IMG/VR virus record: IMGVR_UViG_3300048625_000299
Span: 124,001 to 188,000 of that record
Strand: one strand, 5' to 3'
Length of the DNA: 64,000 nucleotides
The position numbers were made by a program, and so were the translations under genes. Every line of letters starts with the position of its first letter. The first letter of the stretch is position 1. The notes under the pieces are model-generated. The model saw only the letters and a program-made list of their open reading frames with translations, searched no databases and was not told the DNA's origin. Shown piece after piece: positions 11,893-53,887 of the stretch.

Positions 11893-12377
11893 AACTAGAC
11901 AAATTTATTGAGAACCTGACCAAATTGCAAGCTGCTGGACATGGCGACTTGGAAGTGTTCTATGTCCATGGTGCGTCAGGCGATTCTGGGTATCTCGGAC
12001 ATCCGTCAGTCAATGTGATTGATGGATCGGAGCTATGCGGTGCGCTGGTCGATTGGACAGTTGGCGAGAAGTATATCTCCGTCTATGCTGGAAACTAAGG
12101 TATGGATATTGAATCATTGAACAATCTATGGAATGAACTGGTCGCACACTATGGTGACGACTTGCCAGATCCAGAACAACAACCAAAGGAATTTAAGTAT
12201 TATGTCAAACTCTACACATACGTTAAGAACGCTGATCTTGGAGCGGATGCAGCACATGAACAAGCAGATCAATCTAGCTGATTATGCGGACCACGGTGAT
12301 CGCGATTTGCTCGACGATTTCGAGGAAATGTTGATCGAATTCCATAATTTGGAAGATGATGGACAGCGAGGATTCTA

Positions 12378-12593
12378 ATGAGCAAGCTAATTCGAAAACT
12401 TGCTAATGAAGCAAGAATAGAAGTAGGACAGCGAATTGGGTACAACGACCGTGACCGCGAAGAAGCGTTTGAAGTAGAGTTCGCCAAGCTGATTGTTCGG
12501 GAATGTGCTGGTATTTGTTTTAGTAACTGGCGTGATAATGGCGATTCTTATGGTCTTCTAATCAAAGAACATTTCGGGATTAGCGATGAATGA
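12378..12593 (+). CDS. MNERI-family paralog
   Basis: VEFAKLIVREC ... IKEHFGI. Confidence 0.8.
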   Translation: MSKLIRKLANEARIEVGQRIGYNDRDREEAFEVEFAKLIVRECAGICFSNWRDNGDSYGLLIKEHFGISDE

Positions 12594-12825
12594 TCAATTA
12601 GTCAGGCAACTTGCTGAACAGGCTGGGTTTAAGATTTTAACTGACGGCAGAATCGTCCCTACACTCGACCATAATGGCGAATGCGGTAGAGATTTGGAAA
12701 AGTTCGCGGAATTGATCATCAAGCAATGTGCTGAACTAACTCTTGACTACAAAAGCGAAACCTACTACAATGGCTGGTTAGATTATCGTGACGAGATTAA
12801 GAAACATTTCGGAGTTAAACAATGA
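12586..12825 (+). CDS. MNERI-family paralog
   Basis: MNDQLVRQLAEQAG ... EKFAELIIKQC ... IKKHFGV. Confidence 0.8.
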   Translation: MNDQLVRQLAEQAGFKILTDGRIVPTLDHNGECGRDLEKFAELIIKQCAELTLDYKSETYYNGWLDYRDEIKKHFGVKQ

Positions 12826-13003
12826 CACCTGAAATGATGGAGCGAATTCGTAAGGATTTCGAGAGGGAACCAGATAAGGAGACTCTTCACTGGGAAGCGT
12901 ATATTGCAGGATATATGGCTGGTGTAAGGAGATTCGCTGAAAGACCTGATAGGAAAGAGATCCACGCTAAGATGGGTTATTCCAGAGTAGGATTGGGGAA
13001 TGT

Positions 13004-13252
13004 ATGAACGAACGAATTGAAGAACTATTGGGTCAGGCCTACGACGAAGCAGTGCCAGAAACTTGGACTACACTTTCTTCTGAACAATTAGGAAGGATAT
13101 ATGAAAAGTTTGCCGAATTGATTGTTCAGGAATGTATCGGCTGTTGTGAGCAGGTGATTAGTGATCCTGTTCCCGAAAGTGTAGATACTTGGTTGAATGG
13201 TGGCGAACAATGTATCCAAGAGATTAAGAAACATTTCGGAGTTGAAGAATGA
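13004..13252 (+). CDS. MNERI-family paralog
   Basis: MNERIEEL ... EKFAELIVQEC ... IKKHFGVEE. Confidence 0.8.
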   Translation: MNERIEELLGQAYDEAVPETWTTLSSEQLGRIYEKFAELIVQECIGCCEQVISDPVPESVDTWLNGGEQCIQEIKKHFGVEE

Positions 13253-13393
13253 GCATGTATTGTATTCCGAATGCACCCAAACAAAATGGGGATTTGTGGG
13301 TGGTAGTGAAAGACAATGTGGTGACTGTTCTTAATCCAGCAGGCGAATATTGGAGAAATAAGACATTCACAATAGAGCAATTCAAGCGAGAGC

Positions 13394-13921
13394 TCAATAT
13401 CTCTTTAGCCAGTCCTTGATTTCAGGCGTACGTCCCCAATCCCATCCATTAGGCAATTCGGCCAGCCTCTTCTCATTACCAGTCTTAGGGCAATGACACC
13501 ATCTTCTACCAGCAACAGTAGATTTGCCCATTCTAGCTATACTAACAAGAGTCTTAGACATAGCAGACTTCCTAGAGCCCAATGCATTACTAGGCCTACC
13601 ACGCTTAGAGTCAGCCATCTTAGCCTTGGTCTCATCAGACATTACCTTACCAGTATTAGCGGCCTTGACAGCATTAACCATCCTCAACTTCTCTTCATCG
13701 GTGAAGTATTTCCAGCCCCATTTCTTCTTAACAACACACCCTTCAATAACAATAGTGCAATTGTATTGCTTCTTTAGGCGCTCAATAACAGCATCATAAT
13801 TGCCAGAATCTTTGATTGTAGAGACCTTTTCCCACTCTCGACCCCATTCGTTGTAAAAAAGTTTATCGCCCTTATCGTCGGTTCTAAGCGTTCCTTGCCG
13901 CATGTAAACAGATATAAGCAT
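13394..13921 (-). CDS. NUMOD3-motif DNA-binding protein (homing-endonuclease-type C-terminus, no recognisable nuclease domain)
   Basis: GKVMSDETKAKMADSKRG and GSRKSAMSKTLVSIARMGK repeats; RRWCH...ELPNGWDWGR tail. Confidence 0.65.
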   Translation of the reverse strand: MLISVYMRQGTLRTDDKGDKLFYNEWGREWEKVSTIKDSGNYDAVIERLKKQYNCTIVIEGCVVKKKWGWKYFTDEEKLRMVNAVKAANTGKVMSDETKAKMADSKRGRPSNALGSRKSAMSKTLVSIARMGKSTVAGRRWCHCPKTGNEKRLAELPNGWDWGRTPEIKDWLKRY

Positions 13922-14002
13922 ACGTATTTCCTATAATTAATTAATCCTAGTATATAGGAAATGGATAGTTTTTGTGAGAAAGAAGCGTATATGTTTACGT
14001 AT

Positions 14003-14130
14003 AGTATTATACCCCGTCTTAAACTAGTATGCACAATATTATAGCAAAGTATAGGGAATAGAGATATAGATGCACAGTATATACCCCCGTCTTAAACTTA
14101 TATGCACATAGTATAAGGAAATAGGGTAAC
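14003..14130. repeat. Degenerate tandem direct repeat, core CCCCGTCTTAAACT(A/T)(G/A)TATGCACA
   Basis: Copies at 14012-14034 and 14085-14108; related copy at 21426-21449. Confidence 0.8.
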
Positions 14131-14280
14131 AGGTAGGAAAGTAGCACAAGCAGCCGTATATAACCATGTGCAGGTATAGGCAGCGGTAGGCTTAAGCACT
14201 CACTCCATTTGTGCAGCACACTGCTAAGCGCACACAATATTCCGTACAGCAGAACACCGCACTAAGTCAACGCAGCATTT

Positions 14281-14693
14281 AGTGCTACTGCTCACAGCCC
14301 AGAGTCACACTTTTGTTTCCAGTAATTGGGCAGCACAAAATGCCCACTAGCACTAAAGTGCCATGGCACAAAAGTGCCCAGGATTACAGCCAAAATAGCC
14401 ACTAGCTCAGTATAGCCCATGGCTAAAAAGTGCCAATAACGCGAAAGTGCTACTAGCTCAAAAGTGCTACTTTCATCTGAAAAGTGCCACTTTCGTGCTA
14501 CTCGGTCTATGGCTGAAAAGTGCTACTTGGATGGCGATTTCTGCCCATCAGCCAAAAGTGCCATGGCGATGGCTCAGAATAGCCAATAGCACTGAATAGC
14601 CACTTGGGCAGCTATTTTGTGTCCATAGCTAATCCTACCCACAAGAGGGCATGAAAGTGCTACTGTTAGTCAGAGTGGTACTTTTGTTTCCAG
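14281..14693. repeat. Non-coding iteron-like array of AAAGTGC(C/T)A motifs
   Basis: AAAGTGC at 14355, 14371, 14427, 14444, 14461, 14481, 14517, 14555, 14654; interleaved AATAGCC and CACTAGC motifs; no credible ORF. Confidence 0.85.
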
Positions 14694-14724
14694 AGTGAAT
14701 CTCCACATGATTTTGATGTTCGTG

Positions 14725-14753
14725 ATTATACTAGAACAAAGCTCACAAGTCAA
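14725..14753 (-). promoter_or_regulatory. Leftward sigma70-type promoter reading into the repeat array
   Basis: Minus strand TTGACT-17 bp-TATAAT. Confidence 0.75.
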
Positions 14754-14818
14754 CAGCTCACAGATAAGCTTACGATTTGGTTGGGTATTGTTGACATCTG
14801 TTTGGAATGGTGTACAAT

Positions 14819-14908
14819 GGGTAGTGGGAAGATCCTGAAGTTTGCGGAATCTTGGCCTGTCCGCTCTCCACGTCCATCCCCAGTCTGCCTGTTCGAACGC
14901 ATGCCCCT
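14819..14908. ncRNA. Candidate small RNA element E1 between convergent promoters
   Basis: Homologous to 16572-16656; no conserved ORF; rightward promoter 14791-14818 and leftward promoter 14909-14936. Confidence 0.4.
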
Positions 14909-15029
14909 ATTATACATGAAATTTTGGACTTGGCAACAGTTATTTGAATAAGCTTACACTCTGATTGGGTATCTGTTGTCTGTTTGTGACTTTGTGAGAT
15001 AATGAAGTCTTTCAATGAGGAGTGATGTT

Positions 15030-15341
15030 ATGTCTTTCAAGTACGGTGTGTCTTATAACTGTGAGATCGGTAATGATTGTGTGGGTGGTGCTGATGATGG
15101 ATTTTATTCATTAGACATGGTCGGCAATGATTTAGACAAGATTACGGCTTATATTAAGGAGCATGAGAGTGATTCTGATTTGGTGCTTGTTCTTGATGAT
15201 AATGGTGCTTTTATTGGGCAAGGTTGTTCCCAAGGTGGTGATGTTGTTGCCTACTTTGGCTACGATCACCGCGGTGATGGAGAAGTTTATCCCACAATCG
15301 TTGTGTTTGAAAATCCACAAGATTTGACAGTTATCGAATAA
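15030..15341 (+). CDS. Small acidic hypothetical protein
   Basis: Own promoter and GAGGAG SD. Confidence 0.7.
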   Translation: MSFKYGVSYNCEIGNDCVGGADDGFYSLDMVGNDLDKITAYIKEHESDSDLVLVLDDNGAFIGQGCSQGGDVVAYFGYDHRGDGEVYPTIVVFENPQDLTVIE

Positions 15342-15427
15342 CCTTACATTCTAGTTGGGTATTCGAAATAATCGTTGCTCAACTAGAATTTTGTGAGATA
15401 ATTAAATCTTTCAACAGGAGAATGTAA

Positions 15428-15604
15428 ATGAGAAAATATCTGTCGATTGAGTTGTATAGTGGAGAATGTGCTGAACTGTCATATGACGAGTTTATTGAGC
15501 AGATTGAGGGATGTGAGGAGATTACAGAAAATGCTCATTTCATTTCCTACAAATTTGAAGAGTATGTTGTGATTGAAGACAAAATTGCTGATTATGATGA
15601 ATAA
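15428..15604 (+). CDS. 58-aa highly acidic protein (not in ORF track)
   Basis: MRKYLSIELYSGECAELSYDEFIEQIEGCEEITENAHFISYKFEEYVVIEDKIADYDE; promoter plus CAGGAG SD. Confidence 0.7.
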   Translation: MRKYLSIELYSGECAELSYDEFIEQIEGCEEITENAHFISYKFEEYVVIEDKIADYDE

Positions 15605-15614
15605 GGAGAATGTT

Positions 15615-15845
15615 ATGTTAGATACAGTTGAGGTTGTTTCTGTAGAAGATGGTGGATTTTATCAAGACGCATATACAAGTGGCTCTACTGTAGATGTTGT
15701 GCTAAAACGTGGAAATGAGTTTGCAAAGTGCGAAGGAATTCTCATTTTTGAAGAACAGGATGATGAGTCTATGTTCGAATATTTTGAGGAGTGGAAACAA
15801 ATGGCTCAATCTGGTGAAGACGGATATAGCTATTGGATTGAGTAA
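15615..15845 (+). CDS. Small acidic hypothetical protein
   Basis: AAGGAG SD before ATG at 15615. Confidence 0.7.
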   Translation: MLDTVEVVSVEDGGFYQDAYTSGSTVDVVLKRGNEFAKCEGILIFEEQDDESMFEYFEEWKQMAQSGEDGYSYWIE

Positions 15846-15918
15846 GCTTACAGGGGAGTTGGTTATTCAGTTGACCAACTCTCAATTCTGTGCGACAATT
15901 ACATTTTAAGGAGCTGAA

Positions 15919-16179
15919 ATGAGAGTTAAATTCTGTTTTGTAGATTCTGGTACTGGTGAAAATGATGTTGTGACTTTATCGGTTAAAAATATGTCACAAT
16001 CTGAATTCGAACGTGTTTTCAATCAATACATCAATTATGGCGAAGAAGAGTCACCACTCCGTTTGGAACTAAAATCGCTAATTAATCACGGTCAAAATTG
16101 GGTAGCAACATTCACTCATCATTGTGCCTATTTCGGTCCAGTTTTGATTACCGGTATTGTTTACACGAATTTCAAATAA
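15919..16179 (+). CDS. Hypothetical protein
   Basis: Own promoter and AAGGAG SD. Confidence 0.7.
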   Translation: MRVKFCFVDSGTGENDVVTLSVKNMSQSEFERVFNQYINYGEEESPLRLELKSLINHGQNWVATFTHHCAYFGPVLITGIVYTNFK

Positions 16180-16267
16180 AAGTCAACAAGCTTACGTTCT
16201 GATTGGGTATCTGTTGCCCAATCAGAATTTTGTGAGATAATGAAGTCTTTCAACAGGAGAATGTAAA

Positions 16268-16414: not shown

Positions 16415-16434
16415 GATTTCACAACAGGACGACA

Positions 16435-16456
16435 GGACACCGAAGTGTCCTTTTTT
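16435..16456 (+). terminator. Rho-independent terminator
   Basis: GGACAC-CGAA-GTGTCC-TTTTTT. Confidence 0.8.
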
Positions 16457-16571
16457 GTGTTTGGGAGGTACACTTTTGTTTCCAGGATAGTTTGGAACTA
16501 GATTAGCCAACTCTGTTCCAATATCTGAACACAGACTAGCCCGTTGTCGGAATGTAAAAATCGTGTATAAT

Positions 16572-16656
16572 AAAGGGTGGGAAGATCCCAACGTTAGCCC
16601 CAAGTATTGTTTAGCCGCTCTCGACGTCCACCCCAGTCCTGCTTTCGAATGCCTCA
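16572..16656. ncRNA. Candidate small RNA element E2 between convergent promoters
   Basis: Homologous to E1; rightward promoter 16544-16571 and leftward promoter 16657-16684. Confidence 0.4.
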
Positions 16657-16787
16657 ATTATACATCAGAATTTGATTTCGGCAACAGCGTTTGGAATGTC
16701 CTTCTGATTTGTCCTGGTATTTGTTGCCCATGTTGTCCGAATGTGAATTTGTGCTATACTGGGCGCATCACTTAACAGGAGTCTATT

Positions 16788-17129
16788 ATGATTGAAATCG
16801 CACCAGCGCTCGCAACCGTTCACTCGGGAAATTTGCAAAAAGTTTTGTATGACAAACACCTAATCGCCGCGCTCGCCCGGCAATTGGTCGCGTCTTCTGC
16901 GGAGGGACATATCGAAATGATTTCCGATTTCCCCGGCGAATATAACACATTCGCGGACGTCGATAAAGTGATGCAATATTCAAAAGACGCCGCTGCGGAT
17001 ATGTTTTCGGATTTTGTAACGGAATTCCGAGACGCCGTACACGCTGAAATCCAAAAAGTCAACATCGAAGTCCGTAAAGTGAATTTCACAAAAGAATTCG
17101 TCGATGATGTGTACGCCGTAATTACATAA
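16788..17129 (+). CDS. Hypothetical protein
   Basis: Own promoter and CAGGAG SD. Confidence 0.7.
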   Translation: MIEIAPALATVHSGNLQKVLYDKHLIAALARQLVASSAEGHIEMISDFPGEYNTFADVDKVMQYSKDAAADMFSDFVTEFRDAVHAEIQKVNIEVRKVNFTKEFVDDVYAVIT

Positions 17130-25713: not shown

Positions 25714-25911
25714 ACATATACCATGATCCTGACAAAATCAAATAGACGCAACGGCATGGCCGCTCGCAAAGACGGCCTCAGAAGCATGTGGTGCGGCCGT
25801 TGCGATCGTGATGTTGTTGGTGATTATGGTAAGTGTGGAGCTTGTGGTTACTCCCGCAAAAAGGAAAAAAAGAAAATTCCTAGGTTGGAGAAGCTCGAGG
25901 AATTGTTGTAA

Positions 25912-26245
25912 TCCCTTCAAAGCGAAGGACTTCTGGACGCGGGTTCGACTCCCGCCAGGTCCACCAAAAGGATTTTCAATGGATCAGTGGGATGATTATT
26001 TTCCTCCCTTAAATTTGTGGAACTACAGCCTACATTGGCAGTGGATCGATACTGATTCGGAAAATCCTTCTGATGGGCCTGCCATGGTTTCGACAGGGGT
26101 AGATAGTAGAGACGGCAACACGGTAGGCGATGACCGTAAATCAAGCGAAATCTATAAATGCAAACGATGAAGCATTTTTGATGGCTGCCTAATAGGCCCC
26201 ATCTGAGTTTTGCTGGTTGAACTTGGAAACAGAATCAACCAGCAC
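25912..26245 (+). ncRNA. ssrA: Circularly permuted (two-piece) tmRNA, tag (A)ANDEAFLMAA
   Basis: T-arm GCGGG-TTCGACT-CCCGC then CAGGTCC-A-CCA (25939-25966) lies upstream of the 5' strand GGGCCTG (26075); acceptor stem has G3:U70; tag ORF 26160-26192; 5' and 3' limits approximate. Confidence 0.9.
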
Positions 26246-26263
26246 TAATTTAAGGAGTAAAAA

Positions 26264-47326: not shown

Positions 47327-50300
47327 ATGCCATTAGACAAACAGTCAACGACGCTAAGACAGTCTCCATACTTCGACGACTATGCCGAAGAGAGCAACTA
47401 TCACAGAGTCCTGTTTAAGCCATCCGTGGCTGTGCAAGCGCGCGAACTGACGCAATTACAGACAATCTTGCAGAACCAAATCGAGCGATTTGGCGATAAC
47501 ATTTACCAAACGGGTACAATTATCAAGGGTTGTTCCTTGATTACGGATTCAGAATATCACTACGTCAAATTGTTCGACTTGCAACCAAGTGGCGATAACT
47601 ATTCGATTTCTGCACTCGTAAACACGTTCGTCGTTGAATCGACCAGCAACCTGCATGCTCTCACAGTCAACTATGCGCAAGGCGGTCAACAGCTTGATCC
47701 TGATCTAAACACATTGTACCTGAAGTATTTGAACACAGGCACAAATGGTGAGAAGACCTATAGCAACAACTCTGTTTTGACGTCATATCATCGCGACTAC
47801 CGTGTGGAGTCGATTCGTGTTGTTGATGGCGGTACGCTATACTCTAACAGCGATGTTGTTGGGTTCGTGAGCAACACTGGATCTGGTGCAAGTGCACAAA
47901 TTATTACATACGCTAACGGAACAATCCGTAGTGTGAATGTGGTCGAACGTGGATCTGGATATGTAACAGTACCTGATATCACCATTACATCCACTAATGG
48001 ATCTGGTGCATCATTGAACATCATTAACTACCTTGCTCAGGTGCAGGTAGCTAATAGCGTGTACACATCTCCAGTTGGCCGTGGTACAGCTATCAAAACA
48101 TCTGATGGCGTTATCTACCAAAAAGGCCATTTCATCCGTGTTGCCGCGCATGAAACCATCCTTTCAAAATACAATATTACACCTAGCAACGTTGCAGTAG
48201 GTTTCGTTACTAGCGAAGCCGTTGTTAATAGCAACTCAGACCAAACGTTACTCGATAATGCAGGCGGTACGACCAACTTTACAGCTCCAGGTGCAGACCG
48301 CCTCAAGCTGACTGCTAACCTCGTTGCACTATCTACAGCAAACGCTGCAAGCAACAACGAATTCTTGTCGTTGTATGAATATCAAGATGGGCGTGTCGTT
48401 AAAGACCGCACATTCACCCAGTACAATTCTATCAATAAAGAATTGGCACGCCGTACGTACGAAGAATCTGGTAACTATGTTGTCAACCCATTCACGCTAT
48501 ATTCAGAAGGTATTGTAGGTAACACCTCTCATCTGAGCATGGTCGTTGGTGCTGGCGTCGGGTATGTTGAAGGTGGCCGTGTTGAGATTATGAACAACAC
48601 CCGCTATCCAATCCGCAAGGCTACAGATACAGCTACAGACACAACACAAACAATCGCAACCAATTATGGTGGATATGTGATGATCAAAGAGTACATGGGT
48701 ACCTTCGATGTCAAGAATGCGACCACTATAGCGTTGTACAATGATACAACCGCTTCGCCTTATGGCCGTGCTGCTATTAGCACTGGTGCTGGCATTGGCG
48801 CCCCATCTGGTGGTGTTCAGATTGGTACTGCTCGCGTTCGTTCAGTTGCTTATGATTCGGGTGTTCCTGGGTCTGCTGAGTGTACATATCGTATGTACTT
48901 GTTCGACGTCCAAATGTCTCCTGGTTATGCGTTCAGAGACGTCCGCACCGCGGTCGCTAACAGCTCAGGCGTTGCAGATATTATCTGGGACAGCGCTCTA
49001 GGATATGCTGTACAATATGATACAGATTTCGACCGCCTTGTATTTGAGACTGGCACGTTCGCTGTACAACAACTCGACAATGAAGTTGTAATTGCTCGCA
49101 CATCCAACAACACAGGTTCGTTTACGTTGTCTGGTGACTTGAGTATTTCGTTGGGTAGTGGTGTCCAATTCCCATACGAAGCAAGCTCTACGCTTAACAC
49201 AGTTCAAGAACGAGACTTCATTGTTGTGCCAAGCAGCGCGATGACTAAGTCGTCCAATAACAGTGGCACAATTACTGTATCGTCTGGTGCTAATACCGTC
49301 ACTGGTACTGGTACATTATTTACGACTGAGTATACAGTCGGTCAATACATTAAGGTCGGCAACACAAGTATCTCAGGCAACACTGCTCTGATTACTCGTA
49401 TCATTTCGAATACGTCTTTGCAAGTTGCTACTAACTGGGGCGCGACGTGGTCTGGTAATGCTCACCATACAACATACCCAGCAAACGTGCCAATCGATTT
49501 TGCTCCTGCGGGCCGCAGCATCACTACAGATTCTACACGTAGTGCTATTACCGTTTCATTGGGTCACCCAATTACAGCAACAGCTGGCGCTACAATCTAC
49601 CACGATGCAGAGTATGATTCTCCTGCTGTTCGTGTTAAGTCTGCCAACACATATTACGTAAAAGTTTCCAATACAGCAACAAATACATCATCAAGAGGTC
49701 CATGGTGTTTGGGCATTCCAGACGTCGTCGATCTGATTGGCGTATATGTGGGGACTGGTACCACATACGCCAACACGTCTAGCACAAACTATCGCGACAG
49801 TTTTGTCATTGATAGTGGTCAGACTGATAACTTCTATGGCCTCGCTTCACTGAAGATTAAGCCAGGTGCATCTGTCTCGCTCACCAATAAGAACTTGTTG
49901 GTGGTCGTTAAGGCAATGACGCACGGCGTCGGATCATACATCTCGACTGAATCGTATAGTGGCGCTATCGATGATGTGAGCGAGCCATTGCCAGCTAATA
50001 AGATCCGCACACAGGATATTCCTGTATTCGTTTCGCCAAAGACTGGTAAGGCATATGATTTGCGTAATGTGATTGATTTCCGTCCAATCTGCTCTAATAC
50101 AGCAGTACTGGCAGCGAATACTTCAACAGCAACCATCGATCCAAGCAGCACGGTATCTTTTGCTGCTACGGATAAAAAGTTTCCATCGCCAACAAGATCC
50201 TTCACGGGTTCCGTGACGTCATATTTGGCACGTCGTGATAGAATCATCATCGATAAAGTCGGCTCCATCCGTATTGTTGAAGGTACTCCATCCAACTCAC

Positions 50301-53300
50301 CATCCGTCCCTGTTGAGCCAGAAGGATGTATGACTATCGGCGTGGTCAATGTTCCATCATATCCAAGTTTATCTGCTAAAGAAGCTGCTGATAGCGGCCG
50401 TCCAGATTTGGGTGTGTATGTGCTTCCACAACAAAACCGTAGATACACGATGAAGGATATTTCCGACATTGAAGGCCGTATCAGCCGTTTGGAATACTAC
50501 ACACTATTGAATACCCTGGAAACAAGCACCAAACAAATGGTATTGCCTGGAGAAGCTAACTCATCGATTGAGCGCTTCAAGAACGGATTCTTCGTAGACC
50601 CAATGACGGACTATAATGTATCTAATTTGCAAGATCCAGAATACAAAGTATTGATCGATACGGTTAGCGGCATTGCACGTCCATACTTCTCCGACGCACG
50701 CGTCGATCTGAAGTTCAATCCATCTACAAGCACGAACGTCAGCAAGCATGGTGATCATGTATTGATCAACTACAGCAATACGACAGTAATGTTGAGCCAG
50801 CCTACTGCTACTAAGGACCGCACTTTGGTAGACCAATACTGGAGATATGTTGGTAACCTGACCACCGTTCCATCATTCGATAGCTACTACGACATCGCAA
50901 ACACGTCCGTGTCTGTTGTTATTGATTTGGCATCACCACTCAATAACCTAGCGCAAGCTACATCGGCCGCATTGTCGCAACTCAAGGTCAACACGAACGT
51001 CCTTGGATCTGTCAATGCCGGAAGCTCATACCTGATCAGCCAATCTGGATTGACCCAGACATGGAGACAGAACGTCAATACTGCTCTTGCAGATACTAAA
51101 GTGACATTGGCTGGCGGCGGTGCTACTACTTCCAACGCAACGACCGTCGATATATTGAGTAGCCTAGAACTGCAACAATATATTCGCGATCAACGCGTCC
51201 ACTTCGTCAGCACTGGTTTGCGTCCTGGCGCACGCCATTACGTGTATTTCGATGGCGTTCACATTTCAGACAGAGCAGCTCCTGCCACTGTAGACTTGTC
51301 GTTGACGTCGCTATTGCCAACATCTTTCGTTGCTACTGGTGCGATCGGTTCTCCGCTCGTTGCTAACAGCATGGGTGTAGTGGCAGGGTTTATCGACATT
51401 CCTAAATCGACATATTTCGTCGGTGAGCGTTCCGTCGTGTTGATGGACGTCGACAACGTTGAGTCTGAGGCTTCTGCTACATCACGCGGTTTTGGTAAGT
51501 TCACAGCATACGCATTCTCTGGCAACAGAACTAACTTATCGATTTCGACAAAGACTATCGATGTTGCTGGTGGTAGCGGATTCTCCGCGACAAATTACCT
51601 GTCAGCCACATACTACCGCAACGACCACACAGATTTCAACGTTCAGTTGCCTAATCCAGACCCACTTGCACAAACATTTAAAGTGCAATCAACGGGCGAT
51701 CAGACCGACGGCGTGTTTATCACCGGTCTAGACGTATACTTCAAGGCAAAGGATGCCACACAAGGTGTCACTATCGAGATTCGTGAAACTAATAATGGCG
51801 TGCCTGCATCCGTTATTGTTCCATTCTCACGAGTATACAAAACAAGCAGTCAAGTGTCCATCAGTAACAATGCGTCCGTTGCTACTACGTTCAACTTTGA
51901 GACGCCTGTATATTTGAGAGCTGGTAACGACTATGCTATTGTATTGTATCCAGACGCTAATACGCCCGAATATCGTGTATTCACAGCACGTGTCGGCTAT
52001 AAAGATCTGACCAACGCAAACCTGACAGTCAATCAAAACTGGGGCCTTGGTACGTTGTTCTACTCTACATCGGGATCGGTGTGGACGCCTGTTCAGGACG
52101 AAGACTTGAAGTTCACCATCAGACGCGCTAAGTTTGAAGCTACTTCTGGTACTGCTGTTCTAAACAACAGTGATTATGAGTTCCTGACAATCACAAATGC
52201 GTCTGGCGCTGTGCGTGGTGGCGAAGCGATTGCTCAGCTCCACCCAAACAACTACCTGAATACTGTGCTAACATCAGCTACAGATAACAACATTATCAGC
52301 ACAAGTACCAATATGACCTCTTCGTTGGCTGCTGGTGACGATGTATTGATCATCTATGGCACAAGCCCAACAGTAAGCTCTGGCAATGTAACGATTAGCT
52401 CGACTACAGTAACCAATGCTGCTGGCCAGTCTACGTCATTCACAACAGACTATAGTAACGGCAGCTTCATCAAGCTTGGTAGCTCATCGAATGGCGAAAT
52501 CCGTCAAATCGTGTCTGTAACCAACAACACATTGATGACGATCGACGCGCCAATCGTAGGCAATACAACAAGTACACAACAGTTCCGCATTTCGCCACTG
52601 TTCCAAGTTGCAAAGGTACTATCGGCCAACTCTTCAACAATTACGTTGAATAAGGCTGCCGCAGCAAATACCACATCGACCGTGCAAGCTACTATCCAAA
52701 AGGCAGTTGCAGGTACAGTTGACACGTACGACTATGGCAATAACATCATCTATATCAACAACTCTTCGTCAGCTAACGACACATTCAAGTTCTTTGCATC
52801 GAATAGCACATACCGTGCTACGATCATAGGAGACACTACACAAGCCAAGGCAGAGGTGTCTAGCATCGATAACGTCAGCGTCAACTTTTTCAAGCCGTTC
52901 TTCAGCACAATCGTGACTCCAGGAACATCGTTGTCATTGACATCGACCTTCACGCTCCAAAATACTGGAACAACGGACACGAAGTTGTATGAGTTGGGTA
53001 TGTTGAATAAGCTGTCCTTCAACGATAATGCTGTGATCAAGAGCCGTAGTAATGAGATTGTTGGATCTGTCGTGACTAAGTCGTTTGCTGTGTCGATGAG
53101 CTTCAGTTCATCGTCTACAGACACGTCGCCTGTTCTCGATGTGAACCCAGTCAGCGTCATTACGACTCGCAACCTGATCAACAACGATACGACCAACGAA
53201 ACAACTCGCTACGGCAATGCTGTAAGTAAGTATATTTCTAAGCGTCTATCATTGACAGAAGGAATGGATGCTGAGGACGTTAAGGTATTCTTGACAGCAT

Positions 53301-53887
53301 ACAAACCAACCGGCACTAACGTCGACGTATATGCTAAGGTGCTTAACTTTAGCGATGGTGAGTTGTTCGAAGATAAAGACTGGACATTGTTGGACTTGTC
53401 TACGTCCCCATATGTGTACAGTGATTCGTTGAACGATCAAGACTACCGTGAATACGAGTACACATTCCCAGCTACACCGCCATCTTTACAGCTCGGCGGT
53501 GTAGGCCAGACGTACAGCAATACTACGATCACAGGATCTAGCACCGCGTTCGATACATACTTGGCTGCTGGCGATTTCATTAAAGTAGTTAAGTCGAACA
53601 CTTTGACTGATTATGACGTGCTGCGTGTAGCATCTGCCAATAGCAGCACGATCACTACAACAACCGATGTATCGTTTACGTCTACTGGATGTACCATCGA
53701 AAAGGTTACACAACCTAAGGCCGCGTTCAAGTATTGCCGCAACAATAACATTGTTCGTTACCATGGTATAACTGGCGCCGCGTATGATACGTACAAGTAT
53801 ATGGCAATCAAGATCGTATTGAGATCGCCATACAACTACTTGGTACCAACAGTCAATGACGTACGTGCATTAGCAGTATCGGTATGA
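47327..53887 (+). CDS. Large virion structural protein (DUF4815/VrlC-like)
   Basis: SPYFDDY...YHRVLFKPSVAVQARELTQLQTILQNQIERFG...RFKNGFFVD...DPLAQTF. Confidence 0.88.
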   Translation: MPLDKQSTTLRQSPYFDDYAEESNYHRVLFKPSVAVQARELTQLQTILQNQIERFGDNIYQTGTIIKGCSLITDSEYHYVKLFDLQPSGDNYSISALVNTFVVESTSNLHALTVNYAQGGQQLDPDLNTLYLKYLNTGTNGEKTYSNNSVLTSYHRDYRVESIRVVDGGTLYSNSDVVGFVSNTGSGASAQIITYANGTIRSVNVVERGSGYVTVPDITITSTNGSGASLNIINYLAQVQVANSVYTSPVGRGTAIKTSDGVIYQKGHFIRVAAHETILSKYNITPSNVAVGFVTSEAVVNSNSDQTLLDNAGGTTNFTAPGADRLKLTANLVALSTANAASNNEFLSLYEYQDGRVVKDRTFTQYNSINKELARRTYEESGNYVVNPFTLYSEGIVGNTSHLSMVVGAGVGYVEGGRVEIMNNTRYPIRKATDTATDTTQTIATNYGGYVMIKEYMGTFDVKNATTIALYNDTTASPYGRAAISTGAGIGAPSGGVQIGTARVRSVAYDSGVPGSAECTYRMYLFDVQMSPGYAFRDVRTAVANSSGVADIIWDSALGYAVQYDTDFDRLVFETGTFAVQQLDNEVVIARTSNNTGSFTLSGDLSISLGSGVQFPYEASSTLNTVQERDFIVVPSSAMTKSSNNSGTITVSSGANTVTGTGTLFTTEYTVGQYIKVGNTSISGNTALITRIISNTSLQVATNWGATWSGNAHHTTYPANVPIDFAPAGRSITTDSTRSAITVSLGHPITATAGATIYHDAEYDSPAVRVKSANTYYVKVSNTATNTSSRGPWCLGIPDVVDLIGVYVGTGTTYANTSSTNYRDSFVIDSGQTDNFYGLASLKIKPGASVSLTNKNLLVVVKAMTHGVGSYISTESYSGAIDDVSEPLPANKIRTQDIPVFVSPKTGKAYDLRNVIDFRPICSNTAVLAANTSTATIDPSSTVSFAATDKKFPSPTRSFTGSVTSYLARRDRIIIDKVGSIRIVEGTPSNSPSVPVEPEGCMTIGVVNVPSYPSLSAKEAADSGRPDLGVYVLPQQNRRYTMKDISDIEGRISRLEYYTLLNTLETSTKQMVLPGEANSSIERFKNGFFVDPMTDYNVSNLQDPEYKVLIDTVSGIARPYFSDARVDLKFNPSTSTNVSKHGDHVLINYSNTTVMLSQPTATKDRTLVDQYWRYVGNLTTVPSFDSYYDIANTSVSVVIDLASPLNNLAQATSAALSQLKVNTNVLGSVNAGSSYLISQSGLTQTWRQNVNTALADTKVTLAGGGATTSNATTVDILSSLELQQYIRDQRVHFVSTGLRPGARHYVYFDGVHISDRAAPATVDLSLTSLLPTSFVATGAIGSPLVANSMGVVAGFIDIPKSTYFVGERSVVLMDVDNVESEASATSRGFGKFTAYAFSGNRTNLSISTKTIDVAGGSGFSATNYLSATYYRNDHTDFNVQLPNPDPLAQTFKVQSTGDQTDGVFITGLDVYFKAKDATQGVTIEIRETNNGVPASVIVPFSRVYKTSSQVSISNNASVATTFNFETPVYLRAGNDYAIVLYPDANTPEYRVFTARVGYKDLTNANLTVNQNWGLGTLFYSTSGSVWTPVQDEDLKFTIRRAKFEATSGTAVLNNSDYEFLTITNASGAVRGGEAIAQLHPNNYLNTVLTSATDNNIISTSTNMTSSLAAGDDVLIIYGTSPTVSSGNVTISSTTVTNAAGQSTSFTTDYSNGSFIKLGSSSNGEIRQIVSVTNNTLMTIDAPIVGNTTSTQQFRISPLFQVAKVLSANSSTITLNKAAAANTTSTVQATIQKAVAGTVDTYDYGNNIIYINNSSSANDTFKFFASNSTYRATIIGDTTQAKAEVSSIDNVSVNFFKPFFSTIVTPGTSLSLTSTFTLQNTGTTDTKLYELGMLNKLSFNDNAVIKSRSNEIVGSVVTKSFAVSMSFSSSSTDTSPVLDVNPVSVITTRNLINNDTTNETTRYGNAVSKYISKRLSLTEGMDAEDVKVFLTAYKPTGTNVDVYAKVLNFSDGELFEDKDWTLLDLSTSPYVYSDSLNDQDYREYEYTFPATPPSLQLGGVGQTYSNTTITGSSTAFDTYLAAGDFIKVVKSNTLTDYDVLRVASANSSTITTTTDVSFTSTGCTIEKVTQPKAAFKYCRNNNIVRYHGITGAAYDTYKYMAIKIVLRSPYNYLVPTVNDVRALAVSV

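What the first reader, a model, noticed from the sequence alone, without database searches (positions are those of the whole stretch)
14281..14753. Iteron-like palindromic array with a near-consensus promoter firing into it: candidate replication origin
Seen: nine AAAGTGC(C/T) copies in ~300 bp, some forming near-palindromes (AAAGTGCYACTTT at 14461 and 14481), in ORF-free DNA. A minus-strand TTGACT-17-TATAAT promoter points into it. Established: T4 origins are primed by promoter-derived R-loops, and oriE has iterons. Inference: origin or terminase-loading site.
Basis: partly seen in the sequence, partly recalled or inferred. Interest (0 to 1): 0.6.

Follow-up and report, generated by a model that had tools for sequence, protein, structure and literature searches.

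The report
Conserved transcribed iteron-like array, T4-like phage
A unique, conserved block of about 15-20 short repeats lies just downstream of a strong leftward early promoter in the longest gene-free stretch of an uncultured freshwater T4-like phage. It is real, under selection and present in RNA libraries. In one relative it is interleaved with perfect host DnaA boxes, so a replication origin is the leading but unproven reading.

Summary
Nine exact AAAGTGCY copies lie at 14355-14661, against 17 in the whole 234,864-bp genome. With variants such as AATAGCC they form a ~17-bp-period array (14333-14665) bracketed by two inverted extended units. A TTGACT-17-TATAAT promoter on the minus strand (14753..14725) fires into it. 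It is the only minus-strand match among the genome's 11 near-consensus sigma-70 promoters.

The array sits in a 1,093-bp non-coding gap, the longest in the genome outside the tRNA cluster. It is conserved in at least six related lineages of uncultured phages. Non-coding identity to the closest relative is 85-89%, against 60% at third codon positions of the adjacent gene.

Contigs from three metatranscriptome studies cover the array. One ends about 19 nt from the promoter's predicted start. The strand is unknown.

One relative carries eight perfect DnaA boxes within 780 bp, interleaved with the units.

There is no Rfam match, no supported RNA structure, no GC-skew signal and no synteny or sequence likeness to T4 oriE.

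Best reading: a protein-binding iteron array of an early, transcription-activated origin or replication-control region (about 0.38). Main rivals are a repeat non-coding RNA acting as a decoy, and an operator array. Terminase loading has no support.

The parts
14333..14665 (+). Main repeat array: about 15-20 degenerate units of ~17 bp, consensus AAAGTGCYAYTRGC plus 2-3 variable bases. Nine are exact AAAGTGCY; variants include AATAGCC and GTATAGCC.
   Evidence: unique in the genome
14300..14322 (-). Inverted extended unit (on the minus strand, CTGGAAACAAAAGT..ACTCTG), left boundary of the array
   Evidence: the same 23-nt unit occurs in direct orientation in the G002 lineage
14671..14693 (-). 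Inverted extended unit, right boundary of the array and the first unit met by the leftward transcript
   Evidence: conserved next to the promoter in G001, L222, L232 and L236
14725..14753 (-). Promoter P2: TTGACT-17-TATAAT, predicted start near 14718, firing leftward into the array
   Evidence: the only minus-strand hit among 11 near-consensus promoters in the genome; conserved in G001, L229, L235, L222 and, as TTGTCA-17-TATAAT/GATAAT, in G002/L240
14909..14936 (-). Promoter P1: TTGCCA-16-TATAAT, a second leftward promoter. In relatives, cargo genes are inserted between P1 and P2.
14791..14818 (+). Rightward early promoter TTGACA-16-TACAAT, back to back with P2 and convergent with P1
14976..15003 (+). 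Rightward early promoter (TTGTCT-16-GATAAT with an upstream TG) for the ORF at 15015; part of a repeated promoter cassette
14121..14299 (.). Conserved non-coding block (87% identical to G001), with TGTGCAGCACA-type palindromes. No RNA contig of the window's own phage covers it (X2); a short low-depth contig of a relative in X14 overlaps it.
14003..14108 (+). Two copies of a 33-nt element 73 bp apart, inside a 31% GC stretch (13922-14120). They carry DnaA-box-like GTATGCACA (14027) and ATATGCACA (14100), plus AGATGCACA (14068). The element travels with the ORF175 cassette in all lineages.
13394..13921 (-). ORF175: NUMOD3-motif protein, probably a homing-endonuclease-like DNA binder. Units lie within about 1 kb upstream of it wherever that much sequence is held (10 of 14 contigs); of the other four, only L241 (330 bp held) shows a partial unit.
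14374..14640 (.). Stretch held as one 100%-identical contig (depth 48) in metatranscriptome X2

Best explanation
The array is a set of binding sites (iterons) for a sequence-specific DNA-binding protein that is not yet identified. It lies directly downstream of a strong host-RNA-polymerase early promoter. Together with the conserved block and the AT-rich stretch to its left, it forms an early replication origin or replication-control region. Shown: the array is unique, conserved and under purifying selection; the promoter is conserved; RNA libraries contain the array; one relative has added a dense cluster of perfect DnaA boxes to the same units. Inferred: a protein loads on the units, with host DnaA alongside in the L364 lineage. 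Leftward transcription from P2, and the divergent rightward promoter 40 bp away, help open the DNA, as transcriptional activation does at lambda ori or the promoters do at the T7 primary origin. The T4-type replisome then assembles there early in infection, before recombination-dependent replication takes over.
For: The array is unique in 235 kb. It sits in the longest non-coding gap outside the tRNA cluster. The same motif is kept in window, G001/L219, L229, L235, L232/L233, L222/L364, G002/L240 and L236, although individual units are gained, lost and re-spaced. Non-coding identity to G001 is 85-89%, against 60% at third codon positions of ORF175. Units occur in both orientations, and the extended unit is inverted in most lineages but direct in G002. 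That fits recognition of double-stranded DNA. No pairing covariation supports an RNA or hairpin structure. L364 has 8 perfect TTATNCACA boxes within 780 bp, interleaved with the units, and none elsewhere in its 6.3 kb. The window's whole genome has 12 in 235 kb. The window's highest density of TGCACA hexamers lies at 14030-14215. A 31% GC stretch adjoins. P2 is the only leftward near-consensus promoter, and RNA contigs cover the array. T4 oriE also depends on an early promoter (PMC3016281).
Against: No initiator gene is conserved next to the array. ORF175 is a mobile, homing-endonuclease-like gene. The window itself has no perfect DnaA box in the gap. Unit number ranges from 3 to about 20, and spacing from 16 to 21 bp without helical phasing. 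In the G002, L236 and L364 lineages the units lie in the leader of a leftward protein gene, which fits a regulatory role equally well. There is no skew signal. The AT-rich element belongs to the ORF175 cassette rather than to the array. T4-type phages are not known to use DnaA or Rep-type initiators (own knowledge).
Confidence: 0.38

Rival explanations
1. The product is a non-coding RNA of roughly 350-450 nt, transcribed leftward from P2 and made of about 15 RGCACUUUU repeats. It acts as a decoy or sponge for a host or phage RNA-binding factor or ribonuclease. The architecture resembles CsrB, RsmZ or CrcZ, or the phage pseudo-antitoxin repeats that mimic ToxI.
For: Metatranscriptome contigs cover the array in 3 studies at depths equal to or above the neighbouring genes (48 against 19-46; 85 against 39-63). 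In X11 the contig ends about 19 nt from P2's predicted start. P2 lies directly upstream of the first unit wherever the held sequence reaches that far (not in L232, L233 or L236). The A-tract side of the main units always lies on the + strand, that is, antisense to the leftward RNA. Arrays are largest where no protein gene follows. Copy-number change is typical of sponge RNAs (own knowledge).
Against: The strand of the RNA is unknown, because only contigs were available. There is no Rfam match. The consensus fold has a covariation term of only -1.06 kcal/mol. R/Y positions that would pair show no covariation. The extended unit flips orientation between lineages. The DnaA boxes of L364 act on DNA. 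Units are 17 nt and degenerate, unlike the exact 34-45-nt repeats of type III antitoxins (own knowledge; PMC12283969 was listed but not read).
Confidence: 0.25
2. The units are operator or roadblock sites, in the DNA or in the leader, that control the leftward transcription unit (P1 - cargo genes - P2 - units - gene) and perhaps the divergent rightward early promoters. The large arrays are expansions of that control region.
For: In the G002/L240, L236 and L364 lineages, 3 to about 9 units lie between the promoter and a leftward protein gene. In L364 two perfect DnaA boxes sit immediately upstream of that gene's start codon, which looks like DnaA-dependent control. P2 and a rightward promoter are back to back.
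Against: Fifteen to twenty sites over 330 bp, with no protein gene for 700 nt downstream in the window, G001, L235 and L232 lineages, is far more than operators need. L364 also has DnaA boxes in a further 520-bp non-coding stretch beyond the gene. No regulator gene is conserved nearby.
Confidence: 0.18
3. It is a T4 oriF/oriG-type origin: the P2 transcript forms a persistent R-loop in the array and primes leading-strand synthesis.
For: A strong promoter fires into non-coding DNA. RNA is present. R-loop origins are established for T4 (PMC3016281).
Against: The promoter is early sigma-70-type, not a middle promoter. The array is 46% GC with no G-richness on the RNA strand, and the RNA would pair through rU:dA tracts, the least stable hybrids (and own knowledge). 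The repeats themselves have no role in this model.
Confidence: 0.08
4. It is a terminase-loading (pac) site or a centromere-like partition site.
For: Repeat arrays occur at some pac sites and at plasmid or prophage centromeres (own knowledge).
Against: The record ends in a 127-bp direct repeat, consistent with an assembly overlap of a circularly permuted genome, so no fixed end maps here. The array lies among early genes, not next to packaging genes. The phage is a lytic T4-like type with no partition genes seen nearby.
Confidence: 0.03

Closest known systems
Iteron-type theta origins with DnaA boxes (P1 oriR, pSC101, RK2, F; lambda ori)
   Same: Tandem 17-22-bp direct repeats, an adjoining AT-rich stretch, host DnaA boxes beside or between the repeats (seen here only in relative L364), and transcription nearby that can activate opening.
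   Different: No Rep/O-type initiator gene is adjacent. There are up to ~20 contiguous units at 16-21 bp without 2-turn phasing. The window has no perfect DnaA box. The genome is a large lytic T4-like phage.
T4 oriE
   Same: [quoted passage not shown]
   Different: T4's repeats have a 24-bp period and lie inside gene 5 coding sequence between baseplate genes. Here the array is non-coding, 26 kb upstream of the gp6 homologue, unrelated in sequence and has a 17-bp period. The role of T4's iterons is itself unproven.
T7 primary origin / T4 oriF-oriG (promoter-primed origins)
   Same: Promoter(s) reading into non-coding DNA, with an AT-rich stretch further on.
   Different: The AT-rich stretch is 600-800 bp from the promoter, and the intervening repeats have no counterpart. 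The promoter class differs from T4's MotA-dependent ones.
Protein-sequestering repeat RNAs (CsrB/RsmZ, CrcZ) and phage pseudo-ToxI repeats
   Same: An untranslated RNA of a few hundred nt made of many short degenerate repeats, driven by one strong promoter, with variable copy number between relatives.
   Different: There are no GGA or A-rich CA motifs, no hairpin presentation, no Rfam match and no partner protein. Units also occur inverted. Repeat length and exactness are unlike type III antitoxins.

Membership tests
Iteron-type (initiator-dependent) replication origin | Cluster of direct repeats of about 17-22 bp, unique in the replicon | tested here: met
Iteron-type (initiator-dependent) replication origin | Initiator gene adjacent to, or overlapping, the iterons | tested here: inconclusive
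   The only linked gene is ORF175 (NUMOD3; weak GIY-YIG-like fold, Z 4.0). It looks like a mobile endonuclease and is absent from the L364 lineage.
Iteron-type (initiator-dependent) replication origin | Host DnaA boxes beside the iterons | tested here: inconclusive
   8 perfect boxes in relative L364. The window has only 1-2-mismatch boxes at 14027, 14068 and 14100.
Iteron-type (initiator-dependent) replication origin | AT-rich unwinding element next to the repeats | tested here: inconclusive
   13922-14120 is 31% GC, but it is about 200 bp from the array and belongs to the ORF175 cassette.
Iteron-type (initiator-dependent) replication origin | Replication starts there | not testable with these tools
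   Needs infected-cell DNA time courses. GC skew is uninformative.
T4 oriF/oriG R-loop origin | MotA-dependent middle promoter followed directly by an unwinding element | tested here: not met
   The promoter has a -35 TTGACT of early type. The downstream 400 bp is 46% GC.
T4 oriE | Synteny (inside or next to gene 5) and likeness of the repeats | tested here: not met
Known structured or repeat RNA families (Rfam, including ToxI-type antitoxins and CsrB/Rsm) | Match to a curated covariance model | tested here: not met
   No hit at E<=1 in 13000-16000. Only tmRNA models match elsewhere in the window.
Repeat sponge RNA (functional class) | Discrete abundant transcript of the repeat strand | tested here: inconclusive
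   Contigs in 3 RNA studies cover the array. Strand and ends could not be read from contigs.
CRISPR array or mimic | Exact repeats of 28-37 nt separated by unique spacers | tested here: not met
   Units are 17 nt, degenerate and contiguous.

The most novel reading that the evidence does not exclude
The array's product is a phage-made repeat RNA, leftward from P2, with about 15 copies of RGCACUUUU. It soaks up a host RNA-binding factor or ribonuclease early in infection. Each unit carries an RNase E-type RN|WUU site and a partial likeness to the BoxA core GCUCUUU. That would be a new class of phage decoy RNA.
Probability: 0.2. Interest if true: 0.8.

Novelty: new variant of a known kind. Interest (0 to 1): 0.5.

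Why it matters
Replication origins are known experimentally only for T4 itself among T4-type phages, and even there the role of the oriE repeats is unresolved. This element is unique in its genome, strongly conserved, and coupled to an early promoter. In one lineage it carries a dense DnaA-box cluster. That gives a concrete, testable candidate for how distant T4-like phages start replication, and suggests that some recruit the host initiator DnaA, which T4 biology would not predict. If the function instead lies in the RNA, it would be a new phage decoy RNA. Either way, the 17-bp unit is a ready bait for finding its binding protein.

Tried and rejected
- **GenBank phages:** DNA searches of the gap, both near and distant, found nothing.
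- **Loose two-unit pattern in IMG/VR:** it returned only chance and giant-virus tandem repeats. The stricter pattern found L222.
- **Strict pattern in bacterial genomes:** it hit mainly a Prevotella/Bacteroides dispersed repeat. No listed locus had 4 or more units.
- **Paralogous small protein at 13004:** its relatives gave 63 loci, none with the array. The downstream 108-aa protein found no kin.
- **Hairpin models:** pairing across the A-rich part or across the unit junction was rejected. R/Y positions show no covariation, with 21 Watson-Crick against 33 other combinations.
- **RNA folds:** both strands fold better than shuffles (z -3.2 and -4.2). This follows from the inverted units. The alignment fold gave almost no covariation.
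- **Coding potential:** rejected. All ORFs in the gap break in G001, and the 42-aa minus-strand ORF loses its start codon in L235.
- **Sigma-54 promoter likeness (TGGCAC...GC):** rejected on reading the sequence, because the spacing is one base short.
- **Other DnaA-box concentrations in the genome:** they lie inside genes and look like chance.
- **ORF175 fold:** Foldseek found nothing. VIA-align gave only Z 4.0 to the I-TevI catalytic domain.
- **Holes in RNA contig coverage:** treated as suggestive only, because the tool warns that a hole proves nothing.
- **Not used:** the large representative protein search, complex prediction and alternative genetic codes.
- **Operators' limits:** Read laying was given 5,001 letters.

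Full report
**Setting.** The window is bases 124001-188000 of a 234,864-bp virus record with a 127-bp terminal overlap. Baseplate proteins (gp6-, gp7- and gp8-like) place it among distant T4-type myoviruses. The best cultured relatives are Caulobacter phage Cr30 and the Sinorhizobium phiM12 group, at about 40% amino-acid identity. The phage carries 40 tRNA genes and a betaproteobacterial-type tmRNA. Nearly all genes are on the + strand, so cumulative GC skew rises steadily and cannot mark an origin.

**The observation.**
- The finding lies in a 1,093-bp gap (13922-15014). On one side is a minus-strand 175-aa gene (13394-13921); on the other, + strand small early genes.
- Apart from the tRNA cluster, this is the longest stretch of the genome without an ORF. 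Every mechanical ORF inside it is broken in the nearest relative.
- AAAGTGCY occurs nine times between 14355 and 14661, always on the + strand. The window has 10 copies and the whole genome 17.
- Counting variant units (AATAGCC, GTATAGCC and others), the array runs 14333-14665 with a period of about 17 bp and a consensus AAAGTGCYAYTRGC plus 2-3 free bases.
- Two copies of an extended unit in inverted orientation (14300-14322 and 14671-14693) bracket it.
- The minus-strand promoter TTGACT-17-TATAAT is at 14753..14725. Of the eleven matches to TTGAC[AT]-N16-18-TA[TC]AAT in the genome, it is the only one on the minus strand.
- A second leftward promoter (14936..14909) and two rightward early promoters (14791-14818 and 14976-15003) complete a divergent and convergent promoter cluster.

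**Conservation.**
- GenBank phages hold nothing similar. Uncultured relatives do.
- G001 (gp6 91% identical) keeps the whole gap at 86% column identity.
- L219, L229, L235, L232, L233 and L222/L364 keep the array, and all of them except L232 and L233 (contigs end short of it) keep the promoter. G002/L240 and L236 keep the unit motif but only about three units.
- Between the window and G001, third codon positions of the adjacent gene are 60% identical. The conserved block 14121-14299 is 87% identical, the left half of the array 85% and the promoter region 89%. The non-coding DNA is therefore under purifying selection.
- Units are gained, lost and re-spaced between lineages (period about 17 bp here, about 21 bp in L232), while the motif stays. 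Orthologous units switch between GTGCC and TAGCC cores.

**Transcription.**
- One metatranscriptome (X2) holds contigs 100% identical to the window. These are 12000-13928 (depth 30), 14374-14640 (depth 48, the array alone) and 15003-15502 (depth 19). Nothing covers 13929-14373, and only a trace (depth 0.35) falls in 14641-15002.
- Two other studies (X11, X14) hold an L229-like relative. There a 387-nt contig (depth 85) runs from the equivalent of 14312 through the array and ends about 19 nt short of the start predicted for the leftward promoter.
- This is what a leftward transcript from that promoter would give. However, contigs carry no strand, DNA carry-over cannot be excluded, and holes prove nothing. 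I count it as moderate support for transcription of the array.

**RNA or DNA.**
- No Rfam family matches.
- Both strands fold better than shuffles, as any sequence with inverted repeats would. A four-lineage consensus fold has a covariation term of only -1.06 kcal/mol.
- The R and Y positions that would pair in either hairpin register do not covary.
- Units occur on both strands. The extended unit is inverted next to the promoter in most lineages but direct in G002. These points favour recognition of double-stranded DNA.
- Against that, the A-tract side of the main units always lies on the + strand, and the units follow the leftward promoter wherever the held sequence reaches it (in L236 other same-strand genes lie upstream instead). 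An RNA-level motif therefore remains possible.

**The DnaA clue.**
- In relative L222, extended leftward as L364, the same promoter and the same units are interleaved with perfect DnaA boxes. Eight TTATNCACA boxes, two of them the canonical TTATCCACA, lie within 780 bp. None lie elsewhere in the 6.3-kb locus.
- The window's whole genome has twelve such boxes in 235 kb.
- L364 is collinear with the window to the right of the gap.
- The window has no perfect box in the gap. It has the genome's densest cluster of TGCACA hexamers (14030-14215) and three boxes with 1-2 mismatches.
- Dense DnaA-box clusters next to iterons are the hallmark of iteron-plasmid and P1-type origins (own knowledge; PMC4980987 was listed but not read).

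**Context of the leftward island.**
- The order P1 - (optional cargo) - P2 - units - (gene or conserved block) - ORF175 cassette recurs across lineages.
- Cargo differs between them: three small ORFs in G002/L240, and an HNH/EndoVII-like endonuclease in L229.
- ORF175 has a NUMOD3 motif, 18 homologue clusters of the same length and a confident N-terminal beta-alpha domain. That domain resembles the I-TevI catalytic domain only weakly, at Z 4.0.
- ORF175 brings its own upstream module, the twin 33-nt element, which in other lineages includes a clear terminator hairpin. It looks like a mobile endonuclease cassette parked beside the array, not an initiator. It is absent from L364.

**Comparison with T4.**
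- T4 oriE lies antisense within gene 5. Its repeats have a 24-bp period inside the gene 5 coding sequence.
- The T4 review states that no link between those repeats and origin activity has been established, and that oriE depends on an early promoter.
- The present array is non-coding, lies 26 kb from the gp6 homologue and is unlike in sequence. It is not an oriE homologue, although it shares the pairing of an early promoter with repeats.
- An oriF/oriG-type R-loop is not favoured. The promoter is of early type, the transcribed stretch is 46% GC without G-richness on the RNA strand, and hybrids would rest on rU:dA tracts (own knowledge).

**Verdict.**
- The element is real, unusual and functional.
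- I rank an iteron-type, transcription-activated origin or replication-control region first (0.38). A repeat decoy RNA is second (0.25), an operator or leader control array third (0.18), a pure R-loop origin fourth (0.08) and packaging or partition last (0.03).
- The strand and ends of the RNA, an early copy-number peak, and the identity of the unit-binding factor would settle it.

Noticed in passing
window 25852-26260 (+): Phage-borne tmRNA gene. Rfam beta_tmRNA scores 144 bits (E 4e-44) and tmRNA_permuted 146 bits. ARAGORN calls it permuted, with tag ANDEAFLMAA. This hints at a betaproteobacterial host.
   Followed up: partly
window 16430-16790: Second copy of the roughly 100-nt element seen at 14819-14915 (GGGAAGATCC ... 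TTCGAA ... ATTATACAT). It again lies between a rightward promoter and a convergent leftward TTGCCG-16-TATAAT promoter, and next to one inverted extended unit (16467-16487) and a bidirectional-looking terminator hairpin (about 16432-16458). Between window and L222, U-to-C changes keep a small + strand hairpin.
   Followed up: partly
window 14948-15015, 16185-16253, partial 15327-15414: Repeated early-promoter cassettes (ATAAGCTTAC ... GGGTATCTGTTG ... TGTGAGATAATGAAGTCTTTCAA) in front of + strand small genes. They recall the mobile promoter cassettes described for T4-type phages (own knowledge).
   Followed up: partly
window 13394-13921 (-) and loci L229-L241: ORF175 family: 19 clusters, 174-177 aa, 55-100% identical, with a NUMOD3 motif and a C-terminal GW.WGR motif. 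Each copy carries an upstream module with two copies of ACTRGTTTAAGACG around a terminator-like hairpin. It is found in several different gene neighbourhoods, as a mobile endonuclease would be.
   Followed up: partly
L229 2534-3076: An HNH/endonuclease VII-like gene (phrog_3322, E 4e-30) is inserted between the two leftward promoters in one relative. G002/L240 carry three small unknown ORFs at the same site, so it is an insertion hot spot.
   Followed up: partly
L363 3903-4070 (T4 79402-79569): The T4 oriE 'iterons' are six 24-bp-period repeats inside the 3' part of gene 5. They probably reflect the octapeptide repeats of the gp5 beta-helix (own knowledge).
   Followed up: partly
window 12378-13252 (+): Three paralogous small proteins (71-82 aa) share a KFAELIV.EC core and a C-terminal KHFG motif. 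Relatives are widespread in IMG/VR contigs (63 loci).
   Followed up: no
genome 24.2-37.7 kb (outside the window): A cluster of 40 tRNA genes accounts for all other long ORF-free gaps of the genome.
   Followed up: partly
window 47327-53887 (+): A 2,186-aa protein with a DUF4815 domain lies directly after the gp6/gp7/gp8-like baseplate genes.
   Followed up: no
L364 1690-2100: Beyond the leftward 85-aa gene (phrog_13298), the relative has a 520-bp non-coding stretch with two more perfect DnaA boxes, two copies of CCAAACAGATTTTGG 77 bp apart, and several TTTGGAT motifs.
   Followed up: no
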